Below are positions 2,783 through 62,003 of a stretch of DNA of 64,000 bases, one piece after another (position 1 is the stretch's first letter; every line of letters begins with the position of its first letter). Source of the DNA: Diplonema japonicum (taxonomy: Eukaryota > Protista > Euglenozoa: Diplonemea); NCBI GenBank assembly GCA_964019335.1, contig OZ025760.1, positions 62,001 to 126,000 of the forward strand, read 5' to 3'. The position numbers were made by a program, and so were the translations under genes. The notes below the pieces were generated by a model that had not been told where the DNA came from, searched no databases, and saw only the letters and a program-made list of their open reading frames with translations.

Positions 2783-3106
2783 TTCCCCGTTCTTAAACAC
2801 ACCCAGTGGTCGACTTCGGGCGTCTCTTCAGCTCTCCCTTCATATCCAACCCGCTACCGATGCACGGGTGCCTGAACACCTTAACTTGACCATGTTCGTC
2901 AGCCGTGGCAAGAAGCGACCCGTTGTGCGACTTCGCCAAGGAGTTGATATCCGATCCATCGGAGTCCTTCGGCCAGATCCCCTGCACGGACCACCCCATG
3001 AAGGAGGTCTGCGTGGCCCAGACCACATCCTTGCTGGCCTCGGGGCTAACGACCTCTGCCTCTGGCACAGAGTAACATGTCAGAACGTAATCCTACAAAA
3101 AAAAAA

Positions 3107-52217: not shown

Positions 52218-55200
52218 TCATTCGGTGGCACATCTCTCTCTCACCCACTCAGCAACGTTTTCCATGAGCCCGCCAGTCTGTGGGATACCGTGCCCACCGA
52301 CGTGCTCGATTTTCTTAGTGTTCCTTTGATTGAGTTGTTGGCAGGCATGGTAGGTTGCGAGGCACGACTCGCCTAGTGGCTCGTTCGGGTCGAAAACATG
52401 AAGTGTCGGGGAAGGGGTAGGGGGGGTGTGGGGTGCGATGGTGCTGAACAGTACCCCCCAGGAGGCAAGGGATGCGGTGAGGATGTGGCTGGCCATGGCG
52501 GCTCCTTGGGAGAAACCCAGAACACCGTCGAATGGCCCGTGGGTAGAAGCCAGCAAAGAGAGAAGCTGTTCGCTTTCGTCGAGACCTTCTTTGTCTGTCC
52601 CGTCCCAGCCATCTGAGAAACTCCTAACTCCGCTTTGTTCCTTACTCGGACAAGACCACCATTCATAGCTGTCTATCTCTTCAGGCACGTCAGGGTCACC
52701 AGGCCCCTTCCCGATTTGCGGTGCATCTATAAATACAAGCTCGCATCCTGCCTTCGTCAGAGTTTCCACTTGCGACAATAGAACTTGTTTGTTGGTGCGG
52801 AACCCGTGCAAACACAATATCTTGCACTTTCTTTCTGTCCTGCTTGCGATGGTCAACACATCTCCGTCGTCCCTCTTCTTCAGCGAGATCGACTTGGCCA
52901 CCGTCCTCACAGTCGCAGCGTCGTAGAGTTCAACGTTGGGCAGCCCCAGCTCCGTACGTATCGCGTGTGCTAATTGCAGCTGGGACAGGGAATCGAACCC
53001 GAGGCTTGCCAACCCCGCGTCTATGTCAACTTCTTCGTGTCGAAGCTTGAGCCTACCTGAGACATGTTTAAGCAACACCTCCATTGCCCGCTCTTTGGAG
53101 ACCCCTTCAGACGGCTTCTCATCCTGCTTTTCAAGAACGATCCATTTGAGTTTCCTTCGGACGAGCTTGCCAAGCGTGATACCGCTCACTCCCTCGATCT
53201 CCACACAGACCATGACGAAGCTAAGGTTCTCATTTGTCGCGACGCTCCTTGCAACAGCTGCCCACATACTCGCGCAGACTGTTGGCCCTATTAAAACAAC
53301 AACAGTAGGGGTCGTGGCTTGCGGTATGGCTTGCACCTCGGTGAGCACTACAACATGACAAGTTTGGGCTATCCGCGCAATGTCCTCAGCAATGGGACGA
53401 AGCTCCAGAGGGGACGTGATCTTTGTTGTCTCGCTGGAGGGGGCAGCTGCCGACACGTTGGGTTTGATAAGAACCTTGCCGATGTGCTTTCCTTTGTTGA
53501 GGAAGTCTAGAGCGTCCACGGCGGACTCGATGGGGTACGTCACTGAGGGCAGGGCGGGGAGGTCATTGCCAAGACAGTAGTCCCATGTTTCTTTCAGAAG
53601 TTTCGAGCCTAAGGATGGTTGGAGAAGGAGGACATCAAGGTGAGCAGACATGTACTGCTGTCCCATCGAAAACAGGTTCAGGTCCAGGTTGGTGTGGTCC
53701 TGCTGGTCGCGTTTGCCAAGTTCCACGAACTTCCCGAAGGGCTTCAAGAGGGATATCGAGGTCTTCAAGGCTTCGTCAGAGAGAGAGTTGACTACGACGT
53801 CGACACCCTCCCCAGCGGTGGTCTCCATGACCCCTTGGTGGAAGGCGGTGTAGCTACGGGAGTTGAAGATGTTCTTTGGGTCCACCCCGCAGGTCTCTAC
53901 CAAGAACTGTCGCTTCTCGGAGGTCGAACAGGTGCAAAGCGGGATCCCACCCATCTTCAAGACTAAACGAACGCACGCTTGGCCTACGCCGCCTGCAGCA
54001 GCGTGGATGAGCACCGTGTCGCCAGGCTGGACCTTCGCAAGCCATTTCACAGCAAGCCATGCTGTGCCGTACGCTAGTGAGATTGTTGAAGCATGCTCTA
54101 AAGATGTGCCTTGCGGAACCTTGACGCACCTGTGGGTAGGGAGTACTGCGTGGCTTCCAAGGCCGCCTTTCAGTGGCAGTCCTGCTGCACGGTCTCCTAC
54201 TTTGAAATCAGTAACGGACTCTCCCACTGCCACCACTGTTCCACAGCACTCGCCGCCCACCTCTCCAAGTCTTGCTGCGGACATCACACCAGATGCTAGA
54301 AGGACGTCCAAGAAATTCAGCGCCCACATCTCCGTGCGTATCAGAACCTCGTTGGGGTCGAACGCTGGCGGGGAAACGGGGACTGTTTCGGTTTCGAACC
54401 CAGCAGCACCTCCCTTCACCAGCACCTTGTATCCTTCCTTCGCAGTCGTGTCGCCTTCGCCTTCTTCGACTGGGGAGACCTTTGGAGCTTCACACTCACC
54501 GTCCGCTGTGATCCTCAAAAAATCTGGAAGACTCGAATCCAAGCCGGCCAATGCTGCGACATGTTTGAAAGACTCGGCTTGGTTGTTGATGTAGGTTGTT
54601 TGCCATTCCGGTGGAAGGACGCTTTGGCAGGCTAAGCTGAGAACAGATGTCCCGTAGTCAACGTGAGACGATAAGGGCACGGTGTCACCCTGGAGGTCCT
54701 TGAGGAGAACGAGAGCGTCGAGAAGCAGACCTTCAGGGATGCGATCGTGAACGGTTGTCGTAGGAGGGAAGCAGTCCGCAACGTCTTGTGAGAAGGGTAC
54801 AACGGCCACGTTCATGGAACGGTTCCGCACCGCTTTCGCAACGGAAAAGGGCGCGAGCACCATCTGCTTCACAACAGGAGCATCCTGCAAAGGAGTCACC
54901 ACCTCGAACCCAGTCACATATCCCACCATATCAGGTCCCTTGATGACAAGGTCAAGCCTGCCATCTGCAGACCGTGTGCTTGCAGTGGTTGTGAATGTGT
55001 CAGATAGGATGCTCCCCTTTGTCTTCTTGATTATCGTGAAGGATTCCAGCCTATAAGGCAGCCCGTTCCCTCCAATGAGCGACGCCACTTGAGTGCACGC
55101 ATCGATCGTGGCGGGGCTGTACCCGCAGTAGCTTCCATTGTCAACTTTTGCTTCCACCTCAGCAGTGAGCCTCTTCCCGTCGTCGCACGTTTCGATTTTG

Positions 55201-58200
55201 GTCACGGCTCTGAAAGGGCCTAGGTATTCGAACCCAGCCGACGCCATTTTTTCGTAAAGCGTGGCAGGCTTAAGCAGCTTTCTATCCTCGTTGTTGTTCG
55301 ATATGTTTATTAAAGGAGCGACTCCTGGGCTGTGTGCAACCCATGCTTCGGCGTGAACCCGCATTTTCCCTTCATTGTTGAAGTCCTGACTCGACACCAT
55401 GACCCTCCAGTTCTTCAAAGTCGTGTCCACTGTCGTGACCACTTCTCTTGACGTGTGGCTGCCCTTCGCAGCTGTCATCTCCAGCGTGCTTCTGAACCTC
55501 ACCCCCGTGAGGGTCACGCTGTCTCCCTCGCCTTGCCGCACCGCGTCCACAGCCGACACCATCATCTCCAGCCACATGGTGGCGGGCACCACCATCGCCC
55601 CGCTGATTTTATGCCCCGTAAGATACCCCACCCCAGCTTGATGCCACTCGATAGGGTCCATCGAGGTCGGCCACAGTGTGGTACAATTGTACGTTCCGGG
55701 GTGTGTTGACTCACTCGGATGTCCGATCACCGGCTCGGACCTGACGGGGATGATGTTCTTGACGAGGTTAAAGGGAAGTTGAAGTGCTCGCGTGTAGGCC
55801 GGCCAAGACACAATCTTGTTGAACATTACCACAGGGGACAACGGGGATAAAAGATTCTCACGCGTGAAGAACCTGACAGCCTCCGAGGGTGTGAAGAAGG
55901 ACTCGCCGGATAAGGGGTTGATGTTAAAAGCTTCGGACATCCCCACCGTCCAGCCTCCCCATTGGACTGCCTTGACGAGGAGGCCGTTGCGGATGTAATG
56001 CACGGCAGAGGCATCAGTGAAGGCGTTGGCAGCAGAGTAGATGGACTGCCCGGGGGGTCCAAGGACAGAGCTTGACGAGGAAGTCAAAAAAACAACGGTT
56101 TTTGAGGATTTCCGTGCCACTGCTCCGACTAAGTTTTGCACACCGTGCATCTTCGCCCCCACCGCATCCCGAATACCAGCCTGCTTGACGTTCCCAATGG
56201 TCATGTCTGACACTACACCAGCACAGTGGAAAACATACGAAATCTCCCCCGTTACCTCTTCTACAACCTTCGCTGTCCGTTCCTTGTCCATGACATCGCA
56301 TTGCATGTACCGTACGCCGTGTTCTTGGTCTTTCTGTGCAGGTGGTCGGCGGGAAAGGGCGATCGGGTTCCCTTTGGCGTCTCTCACCCATTTTGCAATG
56401 GACAGGCCAATACCCTTCGACCCTCCTGTTATAAGCACGGTCTTGCCCGTCACGTCCAGCGGGGTTTGCTTCTCTTTGAACGGTGTTCGAACGAGCCTCG
56501 AGGCTGCCCATGTGCCTTCCTCACTCAGCGTTACTTCCTCGTCGGTGTATACTCTATGGACGGCATTGTCGATTCTTGATTCTTGTCCCTTTAGGATGAC
56601 CCTCCTTGTTTTGACATTTGGCACTTCTCTTGCAACGCTTCTGAAAAAGCCCAGTAAAGTAGACCCGCCCACACCTTCTCTTACCAGAAGGAGGATCTCC
56701 TTCAGGGCTTTTTCCTTGACGACATGCTGGACCACCTCCACGACCTCCTTCAGGACGTTGAGGTTGGCCTCCGCTTCGACTTCTTCTCCCAACCACACCA
56801 TCAGAAGCCTGCCGTGTTTCTTCACCCCCTTGACGACAGTCTCGATGTCCCTGCACGGCATTACTCCCTCCGCAGCCTTGTGCTTTGCGTTCTGCACGTA
56901 CCAACAAGGCCATAAAGAGGTTGGGCATTGACGCGGGGAAGGGATGGTGAGGTATTCGTGCGTGTAAACATGCGAGTGGACTGGCTGCTCGGTTCTCGGC
57001 AACAATGTTTTTTGTTTTTTACTGTGGGGCATCGCAGCGCTGCTCTCCGGCCAGCATTTCTCTCTCGCATATGGTACAGGCGGGACCCAAGTACACGGCA
57101 CCTCCGAGGTTCCCTTCCATGCCTTGTGCTTCGCAGCAAGCGCTTTCTTCCAGTCAACACCCGCACCGTGCTGCCAAGCAAGGGACAAACCGTCCCAGAG
57201 AACCTGCTCCTCTTGCGATGGGACGCTCTTCAGAGGCTTCGCCATCAAAGGGCACACAGGAACGCCGTCGCCTGCTTCCTTGATACAAGATGTGAGCAGC
57301 TGCGGGCCTGCCTCAAGAACAACGAACGGACGGAAGTCTTGAGAGATGGAAGCAACGGCCTGCGTGAAGTTCACAGGCAAGCGCATGTGGGTAGACCAGT
57401 ACTCAACAGACGTAGCCTGGTCGGGGGTGATACGCAAACCTGTGACAGTTGAGTAAAGAGGGATCTTTGGAGGGGAAAGCGTCAGGTCTTGAAGGACCGA
57501 ACGGATGTAAGGGATGCCAGGGTCGACGGAGGAGGAGTGGAAGGCCGCGTCTGTGGGGATGCGTTTCGGTACCCATTCGGGTTTGTCCTTCTCAATGGTT
57601 TCCAGCTCGTCGAAGGAACCAGAGATCACGCTGCGAGAAGGAGAGTTCAGACAGGCGATCTCGAGGGTATTCTTGCCTTTCAGGCACGGTGCGATCTCGT
57701 CCTTCCCTGCCATGACAGAGACCATGCCGCCTTTGTTCTTTTTTACGAGTTCATCGATGACGTGCCCGCGTGCTTGTACGAATTTGACTGCATCCTTCAG
57801 CGTGAAGACCCCTGCAACTGTTGCCGCGGTGACCTCTCCCAGTGAGTGCCCGACCACTGCAGAGATCCGCACCCCGAATACCTGTGCCACCACCTTGGCC
57901 AAGCTGTATCCTACGGCGAACAGCAACACCTGCGTACCTGCGTTGTTCCTCGGGTTGCATATCTCTATTCCAGCTACTTCTTCCACGCCCTTGAAATACT
58001 TTTTAAACAGTGGAAGCGTCTTAGCATTCTTAAGCCCCTCGCAAAGCCCGTTCGACAGCCCGCCCTGCCCTGGAAATGAAAGCACCGTGGGTACGTTCTT
58101 ATCGCTCAGGCTTTTTACCGGGTGGTGGCCCACGGAGGTCGACACGCGGTACTTGAAAGCGTTCCGTTCGGACAGCGTTTTTTCAATGTTCAGAACGGCG

Positions 58201-61200
58201 GTCGGCTCGGACTTCGCAAAGGATGCAATTTCAGAAGCAGACTGCACGGCCGCCGGTCTGGACTTAGCTGAGATCAAGAACGTTGCGGGGTACCCCACCG
58301 TCTCGACAGGAGCCGCTGGGACAGGGTCATACCCCTCACATATGAGATGCACATTAGTGCCACCTACACCGAAGCTGGACACGCCACAACGTCGGTGACC
58401 TGTCCACGGGGCCAGGACAGTTTGGATGGAGAGAGGATGCGTGATTTCGGAGATGGGATGGGAGTGATTCGCGGTGGGGACCAGTGCTTTGTGGTGAAGA
58501 CACAGAATTGCCTTTAAAAGCCCTGCTGCACCGGCAGCAGTGTTTGCATGCCCTATGTGGCCCTTCACAGACCCAAGGGACAAGGGTGTTTTCCGACTGC
58601 CGTATGTGTCGAGCAGCGCCGCGATCTCGATAGGGTCGCCGACTGCGGTGCCCGTCCCGTGGCCTTCGATCATCGACACGGTGGAGGGATCGACCCCAGC
58701 GTCGTGCAGGCATTTCGTGATGGCGTCGACCTGCCCGCTGCGGGAGGGGGAGTTGTAACTGTGCTTCCGCTTCCCGTCGTTAGCAACGCCGCACCCGAGA
58801 ACCACAGCGTAGATACGGTCACCGTCACGCTCTGCATCGTCTAAAGGTTTCAAGGTGAAGGCGACACCAGCACTGCTAGGCAACGTGCCCGTGCCTGAAG
58901 AGTCATACGGACGGCAACGACCATCTACAGACCACACCATGCCAGGCTGATGGAGGTATCCTGTGTCCTGCGGGAGCTGGATCGAAACTGACGCAGCGAC
59001 AGCCTTCTTGCACTCTCCCGACCGCAACGCAGCAACAGCCGCTGCAACGCACGACAGCCCGCTACTGCACGCAGTCTGGATGGTCTGAGAAGGGCCGTGC
59101 AGGTCTAGGAGGTACGACACCCTTGTAGCACAGTAGTCTTTATCGTTACCCACTTCCAACGCCCAGTACTTAGCGGGATCGTCAACCCTGCACTCCATGG
59201 TGTCCTCTTGTAAGACGTCTGTTAGGTATTGCGGGAGGGAAGACCCCGAAGCGTACACCCCAACGCTCTTCTCCCCAGGCGGCCCCGAGTCGGCCAGGGA
59301 TTCCCTGCATAACTCAAGCAAGACGCGTTGGTTTGGGTCCGTGATAATGGCTTCTTGTTTCGACATTGACCAGAACTCCGGGTCGAAGCCAGTGATGTGC
59401 TCGTCAGGGAGGAGTATGCCGCGTGCTACGTAATCAGGGTTGCCCGCCATGTGCTGGGGTGGGGTGACATCCGTAGAGAGGTCGGAAGTGGTTTGGAGGC
59501 TCTCCCACACGCAGGGAAGGAGGTGCCCGTTGTCAGTGGGCCACCTGACCCCGATCCCTACGACAGCGATCTTCTTGTTCAGCGAGGCGGGGCTGCGGAT
59601 GCTGGGGACCGAAGCGTGCTTTTTCCCGTTGTCAATGAAGCGTGCCTGCTCCTCGATCGTCGACAGCTCGATGAGATCCGCCACACGGAGCGACAAGATC
59701 TGCGACAGCCTTGTTATAGTCAGAGAGTGCGCTCCTATGTCATACATCGATGTTTGTTCAGGACACGATACTGCGGGGTCACCAAGAAGCTCGACCCACG
59801 CAGCACGCACACGGCTGGACGTCAATTCACTGTTGTTACCATTAGGAGCCGAGATGAGTCGGGTCTGAGGAATGCCGACCTTTGCATCAACAGGGACACC
59901 GGTCTTGTACCATGTTAGAAGGACCCTCGAGTCGAGCTTTCCGGTAGGTGTAACAGGGAACCGGTTGATGAACACCAATGTTGTCGGGTAATGGCTGGAA
60001 GGGAGGTCTGTCTCCTTCAAATGCTCCGCCAAGGCGGACGCTGTGGGGTTGCTCTCCAGTGTAACGTCGAGGTTCACCTTCAAAAAGCCGATCAAACAGT
60101 CGTTTGCAACGAGGGGGACGCCGTCGAGGATCTCGGTTCGAAATATCTTTTCAGGGATCTTCTTGAGGTGTTTTTGTATCGCACCGAGGTCGATCCGGAA
60201 CCCGCGTACCTTGGCCGTCTGGTTCAGCCGTCCCGCGATCCCGTAGATCTGCGCTTTCCCGTGGTACTGCGTGCTTCTGAAACAGCCTCGAAGAAGGTCC
60301 CCTCCGAGCTTATCAATGTCGAATGTTACAAGCGAGTCCTTTGTGAACCATGTAGGGGTTCCTTCATATGTTCCAAATGAATCTGAAGCTGTTGGATCGC
60401 CCAAGTAAGTAGTGCCTTCGGGTACACCGGAACCACTCACACCCAGCTCTTTCAAACCCGTGTCTTTGTAAGGAATGGGCCTGACGGAGACGGTGGGGAG
60501 GGGGAGCCCGACAGGCGCGTACTGCAGCTCCGGAAGGCGGTCGGAGATGATCGACGTGATTTGAGGAGTCAGTTCGAATGTACACACGTCGCCTGCTTCT
60601 GTTGTTGATAAAAGGTTCAAAATCAGCGTATCAGGTAGTTTATCGTGAACCAGTTTTAAGGTGTCAATCGGCAACGGTTCACCGGAGAGAACCGCGATTC
60701 GCAAAATCCCGCCGATTCTGGCGATGGACGCGTCTTGCGAAAGAGCGCGGAGAAGCGACGGTGAGAAACAATCGATCCTGGTGATCCCGACCTTCTCGAT
60801 GAGCGTGATAAGCAAACCGGAATCGATGATACTTGAGTCTGGGATTAAACAGGTGGGGCGGCCCCGTGCCATGCCCATCCACCAGTACCACAGCGGAAAC
60901 ATATTAACGCCGATGATATCTGTATCGTCCATTGGGTAATATTTTTCACGGAAGGAGAGCATGTTGGAAAGGTGCAAGTGGTTCATGATGACACCTTTTG
61001 GTTTACCTGTTGACGTGCCGGTGGTCCAATCGACGAAGGCGGGCGTGGAGGGTGTAATATGCGGTAAGTGGTCGATGGAGAGCTTCGGGTTTTCCGTTTT
61101 GCAAATTTCGTCTATCTCAAGAATCGGGACTGTAGTGTGTCTGTCGGCATCGACGTCAGATCTGCTCCCGTAGATTAGGAACTTGGGGTCCCATGTTTTC

Positions 61201-61480
61201 CATATATGCTCCCGTTGTGGTTCTCCTAACCTTAAGTCCACCACGGTGAACGGTGCTCCCTTCAAAGAACAGGCTAAGCATCCTATCACCCACCGTTTTC
61301 CCTTCCCCACGCAGAGGGCTCCCCGCGCCCCGTTCGGGATCATCTCCGCAACCTGTAGCGCGGCATTTATCAACTCCTTGAACGTCATCGTCTCTGCCTC
61401 GTTTCCATAATACAGTGCCGGGTCGTCCGGTGTCAGGCGGTAGCGTTCTAATATCAGTGTGGGGAAAGGTTTGATGTCCA

Positions 61481-61481
<1 letters not shown>
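52218..61481 (-). CDS. Hybrid NRPS-PKS megasynthase A-T-KS-AT-KR-DH-ER-ACP-FSH1 hydrolase (3087 aa, intronless)
   Basis: A: TTGTSTGKPKG, GRLNQTAKVRGFRIDL, TGKLD. T: GAHSL. KS: TACSS, HGTGT, GHANTAAG. AT: GHSLGE, AFHS. KR: TGGSKGIG, YSAAN. DH: HKISGAMVVP, DACTQ. ER: LNFLD, HAAAGGVG. ACP: GFDSL. FSH1: LCLHG, GFSQG, GGH. Confidence 0.95.
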
Positions 61482-61511
<30 letters not shown>

Positions 61512-62003
61512 AATACCCCTTTCTCCCCCCCTTTCTTTTTTTTTTTTGCAAACCTGAGGGGGGGGAAAAAAAAAGAAAAAAAAATTCTCCGCCATGTTTT
61601 TTGTTATCCACTTCTTCATATCAACAAATGTTGTTTTTGAGAATCGCTCCACGGCTGAGAGGGCAAATCAGAAGAAATGGCCCTCCCCCTCAGCCCTTGC
61701 GACACTGGATGGGGTGTTAATTCTCGGAGACGGTAATGTCCCAATTGGGGTTGAGGAGAGACTTCTCTGCGCTGCGATGAAGAATTATAAGAAGAAACCC
61801 GAAGGAAAAAATAAAAAATAAAAAAAAAATACTGAACGAAATAAGTAGTATAAAAAAAAAAAAAGAATCCAACCACCCCCCCCCCCCCCCCCCCCGCACC
61901 TCCTACTAATCTCTCTTCAGAGATTTTTCTTTCTCTTCTTTTTTTTTTTCTTTTTTTTTTGTATCTATTTTTTTTTTTTTTTTTTGTATATCCCCCCTGT
62001 CTT

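What the first reader, a model, noticed from the sequence alone, without database searches (positions are those of the whole stretch)
59900..61481. Adenylation domain looks betaine/onium-specific: possible one-protein route to carnitine- or gonyol-type zwitterions
Seen: the A4 region reads GVNMFPLWYWW, lacking the Asp that binds alpha-amino groups and rich in aromatics, followed by IPD..IID..LL..LI..GIT and NLLSTTE. Known: the fungal glycine-betaine reductase ATRR has an A domain that binds a quaternary ammonium in an aromatic cage, and Burkholderia BurA loads DMSP and extends it with malonyl toward gonyol. The resemblance to ATRR is from my memory of its motifs. Inference: betaine or DMSP plus one malonyl extension, then KR (and DH/ER), would give carnitine/butyrobetaine or gonyol-like osmolytes released by the terminal hydrolase.
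Basis: inference. Interest (0 to 1): 0.85.

Follow-up and report, generated by a model that had tools for sequence, protein, structure and literature searches.

The report
BurA-related onium-type loading domain, protist PKS
The loading domain of this marine-protist megasynthase is a close cousin of the bacterial BurA domain that activates the sulfur osmolyte DMSP, so the enzyme probably extends a small positively charged acid by two carbons into a saturated zwitterion; the exact substrate is still unknown.

Summary
Residues 191-201 of a 3087-aa intronless ORF (61481..52218, minus strand) read GVNMFPLWYWW, and the Asp235 loop of amino-acid A domains is missing.

I fetched real BurA orthologues from two Burkholderiaceae bur loci and a BurA-like gene from this same genome (Diplonema japonicum, per an earlier scan note). 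All three share these features with this domain:
- a shortened A4 loop, seen in none of 160 canonical A domains
- Phe236 (Met in the diplonemid BurA-like gene), Trp239, Ser278 and Lys517
- an S-T-x-E A5 motif
- an Asp at pocket position 330

Trees place this family as sister to BurA A domains (UFBoot 100, SH-aLRT 99). The grouping holds at SH-aLRT 94 after the pocket columns are removed.

Pocket positions 299, 301 and 322 differ (V/S/L here, F/M/A in BurA), so the substrate may not be DMSP.

The architecture is not BurA's. It matches the domain set of the dinoflagellate "ZmaK-like" transcript: A-T-KS-AT-KR-DH-ER-ACP-FSH1. All reductive motifs are intact, so the expected product is saturated (butyrobetaine- or dimethylsulfoniopentanoate-type), not carnitine or gonyol.

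The scan had already flagged the separate BurA-type gene elsewhere in this genome; that gene better explains gonyol.

I could not obtain an ATRR sequence. No biochemistry exists for this family.

The parts
52218..61481 (-). Whole gene: 3087-aa single-exon hybrid NRPS-PKS (stop codon included), orthologue of Diplonema papillatum PKTS1
   Evidence: ORF list and translation; Pfam domains; orthologues
59901..61481 (-). Adenylation domain, residues 1-527. NRPS-type fold. AlphaFold model has pLDDT 84 and pTM 0.82
60990..61028 (-). A3 motif, WTTGTSTGKPKGV (residues 152-164), the ATP-binding P-loop
60861..60917 (-). A4 region, IIGVNMFPLWYWWMGMARG (residues 189-207). The loop is 4-5 residues shorter than canonical and has no Asp235. 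F195 corresponds to position 236 and W198 to position 239
   Evidence: MAFFT and hhalign; model has strand 190-192 and helix 198-205
60750..60764 (-). SPSLL (residues 240-244); S242 corresponds to pocket position 278
60678..60692 (-). VLSGE (residues 264-268); V264 corresponds to position 299 and S266 to position 301. These positions differ from BurA (F and M)
60585..60617 (-). A5 motif, NLLSTTEAGDV (residues 289-299). L290 corresponds to position 322, D298 to position 330 (the acidic pocket residue shared with BurA) and V299 to position 331
59931..59951 (-). A10 motif, TPTGKLD (residues 511-517); K515 corresponds to Lys517, which binds the carboxylate
59622..59816 (-). Thiolation (carrier) domain 1, residues about 556-620; GAHS motif with Ser586
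   Evidence: PP-binding has 2 stretches; sequence
58467..59576 (-). Ketosynthase, residues 636-1005 (Cys805; HGTGT; GHANTAAG)
57270..57935 (-). Acyltransferase, residues 1183-1404 (GHSLGE; AAFHS, a malonyl-type motif)
55947..56441 (-). Ketoreductase, residues 1681-1845 (TGGSKGIG; K1777, Y1815 and N1819 invariant)
54966..55628 (-). Dehydratase, residues 1952-2172 (H1957xxxGxxxxP1966; D2127xxxQ)
53466..54356 (-). Enoylreductase, residues 2376-2672 (HAAAGGVGQA NADPH motif, invariant)
52893..53078 (-). Acyl carrier protein, residues 2802-2863 (LGFDSL)
52275..52832 (-). C-terminal FSH1-family serine hydrolase, residues 2884-3069 (GFSQG nucleophile; D3031 and H3060/H3064 invariant). Presumed release step

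Best explanation
The N-terminal 527 residues form an NRPS-type adenylation domain of the BurA kind. Such domains lack the Asp that holds an alpha-amino group. Instead they present Phe236, Trp239 and Asp330 to a positively charged head group on a small carboxylic acid: a sulfonium or quaternary-ammonium ('onium') acid such as DMSP, glycine betaine or beta-alanine betaine.

The proposed mechanism runs as follows. The acid is adenylated and loaded on carrier Ser586. KS and AT condense it once with malonyl. KR, DH and ER reduce the beta-carbon fully. The C-terminal FSH1 hydrolase releases the product, an omega-onium saturated acid two carbons longer than the starter. DMSP would give 5-dimethylsulfoniopentanoate, glycine betaine would give gamma-butyrobetaine, and beta-alanine betaine would give delta-valerobetaine.

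Shown here:
- the domain order and the intact motifs
- the shortened Asp-less loop
- the shared pocket residues
- the sister relationship to BurA A domains

Inferred:
- that the substrate is cationic
- which acid it is
- that the module acts only once
- that hydrolysis releases a free acid
For: 1. Architecture is A-T-KS-AT-KR-DH-ER-ACP-FSH1, with the catalytic motifs invariant in six orthologues.

2. I fetched two bacterial BurA orthologues (2795 and 2801 aa). They have TE-A-T-KS-AT-KR architecture, a LuxR-type regulator upstream, and a SET-domain gene plus a TauD gene directly downstream, as in the published bur locus. I also fetched a BurA-architecture gene from this same genome.

3. In alignment, all of these share the shortened A4 loop with this family. 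A4 reads GLNVFLAWE in BurA and GVNMFPLWY here. A5 reads NAYSTWESLDV in BurA and NLLSTTEAGDV here. Pocket codes (positions 236, 239, 278, 299, 301, 322, 330, 331, 517) are FWSVSLDVK here, FWSVSLDAK in Perkinsus and FWSFMADVK in BurA. None of 160 canonical domains has the short loop.

4. IQ-TREE (LG+C20) places family plus BurA together: SH-aLRT 86 with 91 rows; UFBoot 100 / SH-aLRT 99 with 63 rows; SH-aLRT 94 after deleting 74 pocket columns.

5. BurA-A is experimentally DMSP-specific. It is described as having a shorter hydrophobic loop in place of the D235 loop and a pocket acid, D606. ATRR-A has F201, W204, W270 and E304 (PMC7496086; bioRxiv 10.1101/559534). The spacings 3/66/34 between those ATRR residues equal those between F195, W198, V264 and D298 here.

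6. The pocket is conserved from diplonemids to Perkinsus at only 27% overall identity.

7. DMSP, glycine betaine and gonyol were measured in D. papillatum, which carries the orthologue PKTS1 (PMC8611851).
Against: - There is no biochemical evidence for any member of this family.
- Overall identity to BurA-type A domains is only about 21%, and both groups sit on long branches, so attraction is possible.
- Three pocket positions differ from BurA (V/S/L against F/M/A). The third aromatic residue of the ATRR cage (W270, inferred to be position 299) is Val here.
- Loss of Asp235 is also typical of domains that load aryl, keto, hydroxy or fatty acids.
- I could not align ATRR, Ebony, SwnK or the dinoflagellate sequences.
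- Equating BurA D606 with position 330 rests on numbering: the aligned Asp is residue 588 or 599 in my two ORF calls.
- The D. papillatum osmolyte table, as held (one file was cut when stored), lists no butyrobetaine, valerobetaine or dimethylsulfoniopentanoate.
- Expression in D. japonicum was not shown.
Confidence: 0.55

Rival explanations
1. The domain loads a small omega- or beta-amino acid with a protonated primary amine (beta-alanine or GABA). Asp298 forms a salt bridge to the amine. The product would be 5-aminovalerate or 6-aminocaproate.
For: A cationic substrate fits Asp330 together with the missing Asp235. BurA-A still accepts a protonated-nitrogen analogue at about a quarter of its DMSP activity (PMC7496086). 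From my memory only, published beta-alanine codes (V-D-W-V-I-S-L-A-D-K type) resemble W-S-V-S-L at positions 239-322.
Against: Phe236 and Trp239, with no second H-bond acceptor, favour a methylated onium head, as in BurA and ATRR. As I recall them, beta-alanine domains keep an Asp at position 236, whereas this domain has Phe. The nearest relatives are BurA domains.
Confidence: 0.15
2. The substrate is not cationic. It would be a short hydroxy, keto, aryl or fatty acid, as in other A-T-PKS fusions, and the shared features with BurA reflect common descent rather than shared specificity.
For: Most characterised A domains without Asp235 load aryl, keto or hydroxy acids (bioRxiv 10.1101/559534). 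Fungal A-T-PKS fusions load aryl acids (PMC9972472, listed). Three of nine pocket residues differ from BurA.
Against: A buried, invariant Asp at position 330 in an otherwise hydrophobic pocket is hard to explain for a neutral or anionic ligand. Profile, sequence and fold matches are to NRPS A domains and DltA, not to FAAL or acyl-CoA synthetases. The pocket residues shared with BurA are exactly the head-group residues.
Confidence: 0.15
3. The starter class is the same, but the single module works iteratively, like a fatty-acid synthase or a fungal HR-PKS. It would then make a long-chain omega-onium fatty acid rather than a C2-extended osmolyte.
For: It is a lone, fully reducing KS-AT-KR-DH-ER-ACP module with a hydrolase, which is the layout of iterative synthases. 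Diplonemids are rich in betaine lipids (PMC8611851).
Against: BurA, the nearest characterised relative of the loading part, extends only once (PMC7496086). No such lipid is known. Nothing in the sequence decides the number of cycles.
Confidence: 0.12
4. The A domain is a degenerate relic, and the synthase is primed some other way.
For: The A5 motif is LSTTE instead of YGPTE, and the domain scores only 99 bits against a TIGR01733 cut-off of 317.
Against: A3, A7 (D382), A8 and A10 (K515) are intact and invariant. The unusual residues are themselves invariant across diplonemids and conserved in Perkinsus. BurA, which is active, has the same S-T-x-E motif. The model is confident.
Confidence: 0.03

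Closest known systems
BurA (gonyol-forming NRPS-PKS of the Burkholderia pseudomallei-group bur/mal locus); its A domain loads DMSP
   Same: The A domain has the same shortened, Asp235-less A4 loop. Phe236, Trp239, Ser278, Asp330, Val331, Lys517 and the S-T-x-E A5 motif are also the same. It is the sister group in trees. As in BurA, an A-T pair feeds a KS-AT module that uses malonyl.
   Different: - BurA has an N-terminal TE, and KR is the only reductive domain Pfam detected in it. This protein has no N-terminal TE, a full KR-DH-ER loop and an FSH1 hydrolase.
- Pocket positions 299, 301 and 322 are V/S/L here and F/M/A in BurA.
- Overall A-domain identity to the diplonemid BurA-like domain is about 21%.
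- This is a nuclear eukaryotic gene with no biosynthetic neighbours.
ATRR (fungal glycine betaine reductase, A-T-R1-R2)
   Same: The published features are no Asp235, an aromatic pair F201/W204, and an acid at E304. The spacing of those residues (3, 66, 34) matches F195, W198, V264 and D298 here.
   Different: The third cage residue, W270, corresponds to Val264 here. ATRR reduces its substrate rather than extending it. No sequence comparison was possible, because I could not fetch ATRR. No A-T-R-R gene was found among the five A-(T)-R ORFs examined in this genome.
Dinoflagellate 'ZmaK-like' hybrid NRPS/PKS transcript (Amphidinium carterae comp26075; Williams et al. 2021, PMC8283056)
   Same: The domain inventory is identical: two thiolation domains, A, KS, AT, KR, DH, ER and an FSH1 serine hydrolase. 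Its function is unknown. Alveolate relatives of this family exist in Perkinsus.
   Different: Homology to the dinoflagellate sequence itself was not tested, because no sequence was available. That paper put the ZmaK-like and BurA-like A domains in separate clusters and proposed no substrate.
LovG-type FSH1 esterases that release products from fungal HR-PKS (from my own knowledge, not tested here)
   Same: The C-terminal domain belongs to Pfam FSH1 and keeps a Ser-Asp-His set. This suggests hydrolytic release.
   Different: Here the hydrolase is fused in cis to the carrier protein. I made no direct comparison with LovG.

Membership tests
BurA/ATRR-type zwitterion (onium-acid) adenylation domains | [quoted passage not shown] | tested here: met
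   L-INS-i and hhalign place a 5-residue gap over the s-F-D(235) stretch. BurA and the diplonemid BurA-like domain show the same gap. Of 160 canonical domains, 156 have 23 residues between the anchor columns and none has fewer than 22; this family has 20 and BurA has 18.
BurA/ATRR-type zwitterion (onium-acid) adenylation domains | An acidic residue sits at a second pocket position (BurA D606, ATRR E304) | tested here: met
   D298 (position 330) aligns with the Asp of BurA's W-E-S-L-D and of the diplonemid BurA-like W-E-G-A-D. It is invariant in all family members. That this Asp is the published D606 is inferred from numbering (residue 588 or 599 in my ORF calls).
BurA/ATRR-type zwitterion (onium-acid) adenylation domains | An aromatic cage for cation-pi binding (ATRR F201, W204, W270) | tested here: inconclusive
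   F195 and W198 match BurA's F and W and the spacing of ATRR F201/W204. The third position (299) is Val here, Phe in BurA and Trp in ATRR. An aromatic-rich A4 helix is not diagnostic on its own, since 12% of canonical domains have one.
BurA/ATRR-type zwitterion (onium-acid) adenylation domains | Phylogenetic grouping with a characterised member | tested here: met
   Sister to BurA A domains: SH-aLRT 86, UFBoot 100 / SH-aLRT 99, and SH-aLRT 94 without the pocket columns. ATRR was not in the tree.
BurA/ATRR-type zwitterion (onium-acid) adenylation domains | Adenylation of DMSP or a betaine, with rejection of neutral isosteres and amino acids | not testable with these tools
   This needs an enzyme assay.
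BurA orthologue (gonyol synthase) | TE-A-T-KS-AT-KR architecture, with KR as the only reductive domain | tested here: not met
   This protein is A-T-KS-AT-KR-DH-ER-ACP-FSH1. A different gene in the same genome (G000:C72:389239-397071) has the BurA layout.
BurA orthologue (gonyol synthase) | The same specificity pocket as BurA | tested here: not met
   Six of nine positions are identical. Positions 299, 301 and 322 are V/S/L here and F/M/A in BurA.
Dinoflagellate 'ZmaK-like' NRPS/PKS | Domain set: A, 2 T, KS, AT, KR, DH, ER, FSH1 | tested here: met
   Pfam result compared with the description in PMC8283056.
Dinoflagellate 'ZmaK-like' NRPS/PKS | Sequence homology to the A. carterae transcript | not tested
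   No dinoflagellate sequence was reachable. Perkinsus fragments with the same A4 and A5 motifs and the start of a KS were found.
Canonical alpha-amino-acid NRPS adenylation domain | Asp235 binds the alpha-amino group, and the TIGR01733 score is above its cut-off | tested here: not met
   There is no Asp235. The TIGR01733 score is 99 bits against a cut-off of 317.
Canonical alpha-amino-acid NRPS adenylation domain | Core catalytic motifs and the NRPS A-domain fold | tested here: met
   A3, A7 (D382), A8 and A10 (K515) are present. The best PDB fold matches are DltA, Txo2, EntF, PltF and GrsA.
Fatty acyl-AMP ligase / acyl-CoA synthetase | Best profile and fold matches are to FAAL or FACS | tested here: not met
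   FACS profiles score 51 bits or less, against 99 bits for the NRPS profile. PDB sequence and fold hits are led by NRPS A domains. In the tree the genome's own FAAL and FACS-like domains fall outside.

The most novel reading that the evidence does not exclude
PKTS1-type synthases could be a trimethyllysine-independent route to gamma-butyrobetaine. Glycine betaine would be loaded, extended once with malonyl and fully reduced, then passed to the genome's BBOX-like dioxygenase to make carnitine. That would be a one-protein carnitine-precursor pathway shared by diplonemids, perkinsids and probably dinoflagellates.
Probability: 0.08. Interest if true: 0.9.

Novelty: new variant of a known kind. 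Interest (0 to 1): 0.62.

Why it matters
Diplonemids are among the most abundant heterotrophic protists in the ocean, and DMSP-derived sulfonium compounds and betaines drive marine sulfur and carbon cycling. BurA is the only enzyme known to feed an onium acid into a thiotemplate line.

A second, eukaryotic, fully reducing line with a BurA-related loading domain would have three consequences:
- It would give the orphan dinoflagellate 'ZmaK-like' gene a testable function.
- It would predict a saturated zwitterion not yet reported from these organisms (m/z 163.079, 146.118 or 160.133).
- Together with the BurA-like gene in the same genome, it would show that protists vary the reductive loop on a common onium-loading unit.

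D. papillatum is genetically tractable and has published metabolomes, so the prediction can be tested directly.

Tried and rejected
1. Fetching ATRR. Three homologue searches and the one all-library HMMER search returned no A-T-R-R protein. The HMMER list was swamped by multi-module NRPSs whose scores sum over several A domains. The ESM Atlas gave only generic AMP-binding clusters. Papers give the ATRR and BurA pocket codes only as images.

2. Looking for an ATRR in this genome. The five A-(T)-R ORFs examined have no second reductase domain in Pfam. By their motifs one looks Lys2-like and others acyl-CoA-synthetase-like.

3. Finding the bur locus through the SET-domain Pfam family. This was useless, because 360 of 401 Burkholderiaceae genomes have a SET gene. 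Using my own A domain as the query hit only ordinary NRPSs. The search succeeded only once the diplonemid BurA-like A domain was the query.

4. A DNA pattern for WYWW plus TTExGD. It found no real match in 185,579 prokaryote species genomes and one protist contig in metagenomes.

5. Gene neighbourhood. The neighbours are a U-box protein, an ankyrin protein and a FAM177 protein, which is not informative.

6. Expression. All five runs that hold this stretch are kept only as contigs of unknown library type. Their contigs break at the low-complexity tract 61477-61590, so there is no evidence either way.

7. The idea that carnitine synthesis has a gap. I rejected it as support, because both a TMLD-like and a BBOX-like dioxygenase exist.

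8. The first candidate for the BurA-type gene (C111) turned out to be an ACBPx3-FAALx2-KS-AT synthase.

Full report
**The gene.** The flagged stretch is the 5' end of one uninterrupted 3144-codon open frame on the minus strand (52218..61652). The first 57 codons translate an A/T-rich low-complexity tract. Met58 (nt 61481) lines up with the N-termini of the orthologues, so the protein has 3087 residues. Pfam finds AMP-binding (15-334), PP-binding (two stretches), KS (636-1005), AT (1183-1404), KR (1681-1845), DH (1952-2172), ER (2376-2672), a second carrier (2802-2863) and an FSH1 serine hydrolase (2884-3069). The neighbours are a U-box protein, an ankyrin protein and a FAM177-like protein, with no biosynthetic context.

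**The family.** In 5.8 billion clustered proteins and a 1.84-billion-protein representative library, the only proteins above 30% identity are five full-length orthologues with the same domain set. They are D. papillatum PKTS1, Lacrimia lanifica, Sulcionema specki and two unnamed ENA assemblies, at 39-47% identity. Truncated gene models from Perkinsus marinus and P. chesapeaki (27% identity, A-T and the start of a KS) and one protist metagenome contig carry the same A4 and A5 motifs. A DNA pattern for the two motifs found nothing real in 185,579 prokaryotic species genomes. The domain inventory equals that of the dinoflagellate 'ZmaK-like' transcript, whose function is unknown (PMC8283056). I had no dinoflagellate sequence, so that link is an inference.

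**The observation.** Three controls show which parts are unusual.
- The aromatic richness of the helix is not unusual: 12% of 1095 canonical domains have four or more aromatic residues in it.
- The loop is unusual. L-INS-i and a profile-profile alignment against 160 canonical domains both delete the s-F-D(235) segment, and none of the 160 has a segment that short.
- Asp at pocket position 330 occurs in 3% of 1212 canonical domains, nearly always alongside Asp235.

The resulting code for positions 236, 239, 278, 299, 301, 322, 330, 331 and 517 is F W S V S L D V K. An AlphaFold model (pLDDT 84, pTM 0.82) has a strand at 190-192 and a helix at 198-205, consistent with that register. Its best PDB neighbours are DltA and NRPS A domains, not fatty-acyl ligases (sequence searches agree).

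**The comparison with BurA.** I could not reach an ATRR sequence (see Tried and rejected). An earlier scan note said this genome also holds a BurA-type megasynthase. I located it at G000:C72:389239-395094, with a second frame at 395110-397071. The first frame encodes TE-A-T-KS-AT and the second encodes KR. The two frames are 15 nt apart; I searched them separately and did not join them.

Using its A domain as the query on 401 Burkholderiaceae genomes gave two outstanding hits at E about 1e-61, in ORFs of 2795 and 2801 aa. Their architecture is TE-A-T-KS-AT-KR. They have a LuxR-type regulator upstream and a SET-domain gene plus a TauD gene immediately downstream. That is the published bur locus layout, with BurB as the SET-domain methyltransferase (PMC7496086).

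**What the alignment shows.** BurA, the diplonemid BurA-like domain and this family share the shortened A4 loop.
- A4 reads G-L-N-V-F-L-A-W-E in BurA and G-V-N-M-F-P-L-W-Y here.
- A5 reads N-A-Y-S-T-W-E-S-L-D-V in BurA and N-L-L-S-T-T-E-A-G-D-V here, where canonical domains have N-x-Y-G-P-T-E.
- Pocket codes are F W S F M A D V K for BurA, M W S F M A D T K for the diplonemid BurA-like domain, F W S V S L D V K for this family and F W S V S L D A K for Perkinsus.

So the residues that the BurA and ATRR papers assign to the charged head group are shared: a hydrophobic short loop, aromatic residues, and one pocket acid. Three residues deeper in the pocket differ. The aligned Asp is residue 588 or 599 in my two BurA ORF calls and 592 in the diplonemid BurA-like protein, close to the published D606. 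Equating them is an inference. The published ATRR residues F201, W204, W270 and E304 have spacings 3, 66 and 34, the same as F195, W198, V264 and D298 here. That agreement is suggestive only, because the spacing from 239 to 299 varies and 34 from 299 to 330 also occurs in an ordinary A domain (seen in the alignment).

**Phylogeny.** With 70 canonical domains, other ANL domains of this genome and FAAL/FACS outgroups, the family (support 100) is sister to the BurA clade (98) with SH-aLRT 86. Without the long outgroups, and with a different canonical subsample, the joint branch has UFBoot 100 and SH-aLRT 99. After removing 74 columns around A4, position 278, positions 299-301 and A5, it still stands at SH-aLRT 94. 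The resemblance is therefore not only convergence in the pocket.

Caveats: both groups are long-branched, pairwise identity is about 21%, and the sample lacks ATRR, Ebony and the aryl- and keto-acid types.

**Product.** KR (K1777, Y1815, N1819), DH (HxxxGxxxxP and DxxxQ), ER (HAAAGGVGQA), both carrier serines and the hydrolase triad are intact and invariant. The AT has a malonyl-type AAFHS motif. One round would therefore give a saturated acid two carbons longer than the starter. That points to gamma-butyrobetaine-type or 5-dimethylsulfoniopentanoate-type products rather than carnitine or gonyol. Gonyol, measured together with DMSP and glycine betaine in D. papillatum (PMC8611851), is better explained by the BurA-like gene. 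The genome has both a TMLD-like dioxygenase (233 bits) and a BBOX-like dioxygenase (225 bits), so carnitine synthesis shows no evident gap. Whether the module iterates cannot be read from the sequence.

**Verdict.** The specific acid and product remain inferred, and part of the proposed chemistry (carnitine, gonyol) is unlikely given the intact DH and ER. The domain is not a BurA orthologue. It is a new, eukaryote-wide variant that joins a BurA-related loader to a fully reducing module.

Noticed in passing
G000:C72:389239-397071 (L043:4240-10000 and L044:4111-6072), plus strand: A BurA-architecture gene in the same genome. The first open frame (1952 aa) encodes TE-A-T-KS-AT. A second frame (654 aa, KR) follows after 15 nt, probably across a micro-intron. 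It was already flagged by the scan as a candidate gonyol synthase. Its A-domain pocket code is M W S F M A D T K.
   Followed up: partly
G000:C96, about 198-291 kb, minus strand: A single open frame of 21,455 aa with at least eight strong AMP-binding matches and a KS match, that is, a giant NRPS(-PKS).
   Followed up: no
G000:C111:44754-52820, minus strand (L041/L042): A 2689-aa open frame with three ACBP domains, two FAAL-like AMP-binding domains (DIP2-like), a KS and an AT. This is an unusual acyl-CoA-binding/FAAL-primed PKS.
   Followed up: no
G000:C17:321651-322841 (L023:1081-2271) and G000:C12:625249-626526 (L020:1369-2646): A TMLD-like dioxygenase (233 bits) and a BBOX/TmpA-like dioxygenase (225 and 236 bits). 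The two dioxygenases of the canonical carnitine pathway therefore seem to be present.
   Followed up: partly
G000:C94:66273-70946 (L036:4274-8947), minus strand: A C-A-T-R protein with the HDPLQRD motif, which I recall as a Lys2 signature. It is probably an alpha-aminoadipate reductase.
   Followed up: no
window 61477-61652: An A/T-rich homopolymer tract just upstream of the start codon translates as FFFFFFPPP...KKKKKKEKKK. Contigs from all four laid public runs break at 61477-61590.
   Followed up: no
L004 (metagenome contig Ga0214917_10026050), 1-1620, minus strand: A complete A domain of this family from an unidentified protist, with NLFSLWYWW and FSTTETGDV motifs, next to WD40- and JmjC-like genes.
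   Followed up: partly
L047-L049 (Burkholderiaceae) and protein P0245, second A domain: A small group of bacterial A domains with a slightly shortened A4 (N-F-I-D-F-L-W-E) and odd A5 motifs (G-T-S-E-F-W-D-A-T and G-T-T-E-V-A-G-D-V). They fall outside the main canonical clade, next to the family-plus-BurA group.
   Followed up: no
window 52218-61481: The reductive domains come in the order KR-DH-ER, not the usual DH-ER-KR. The scan noted this separately (s1-867062).
   Followed up: no
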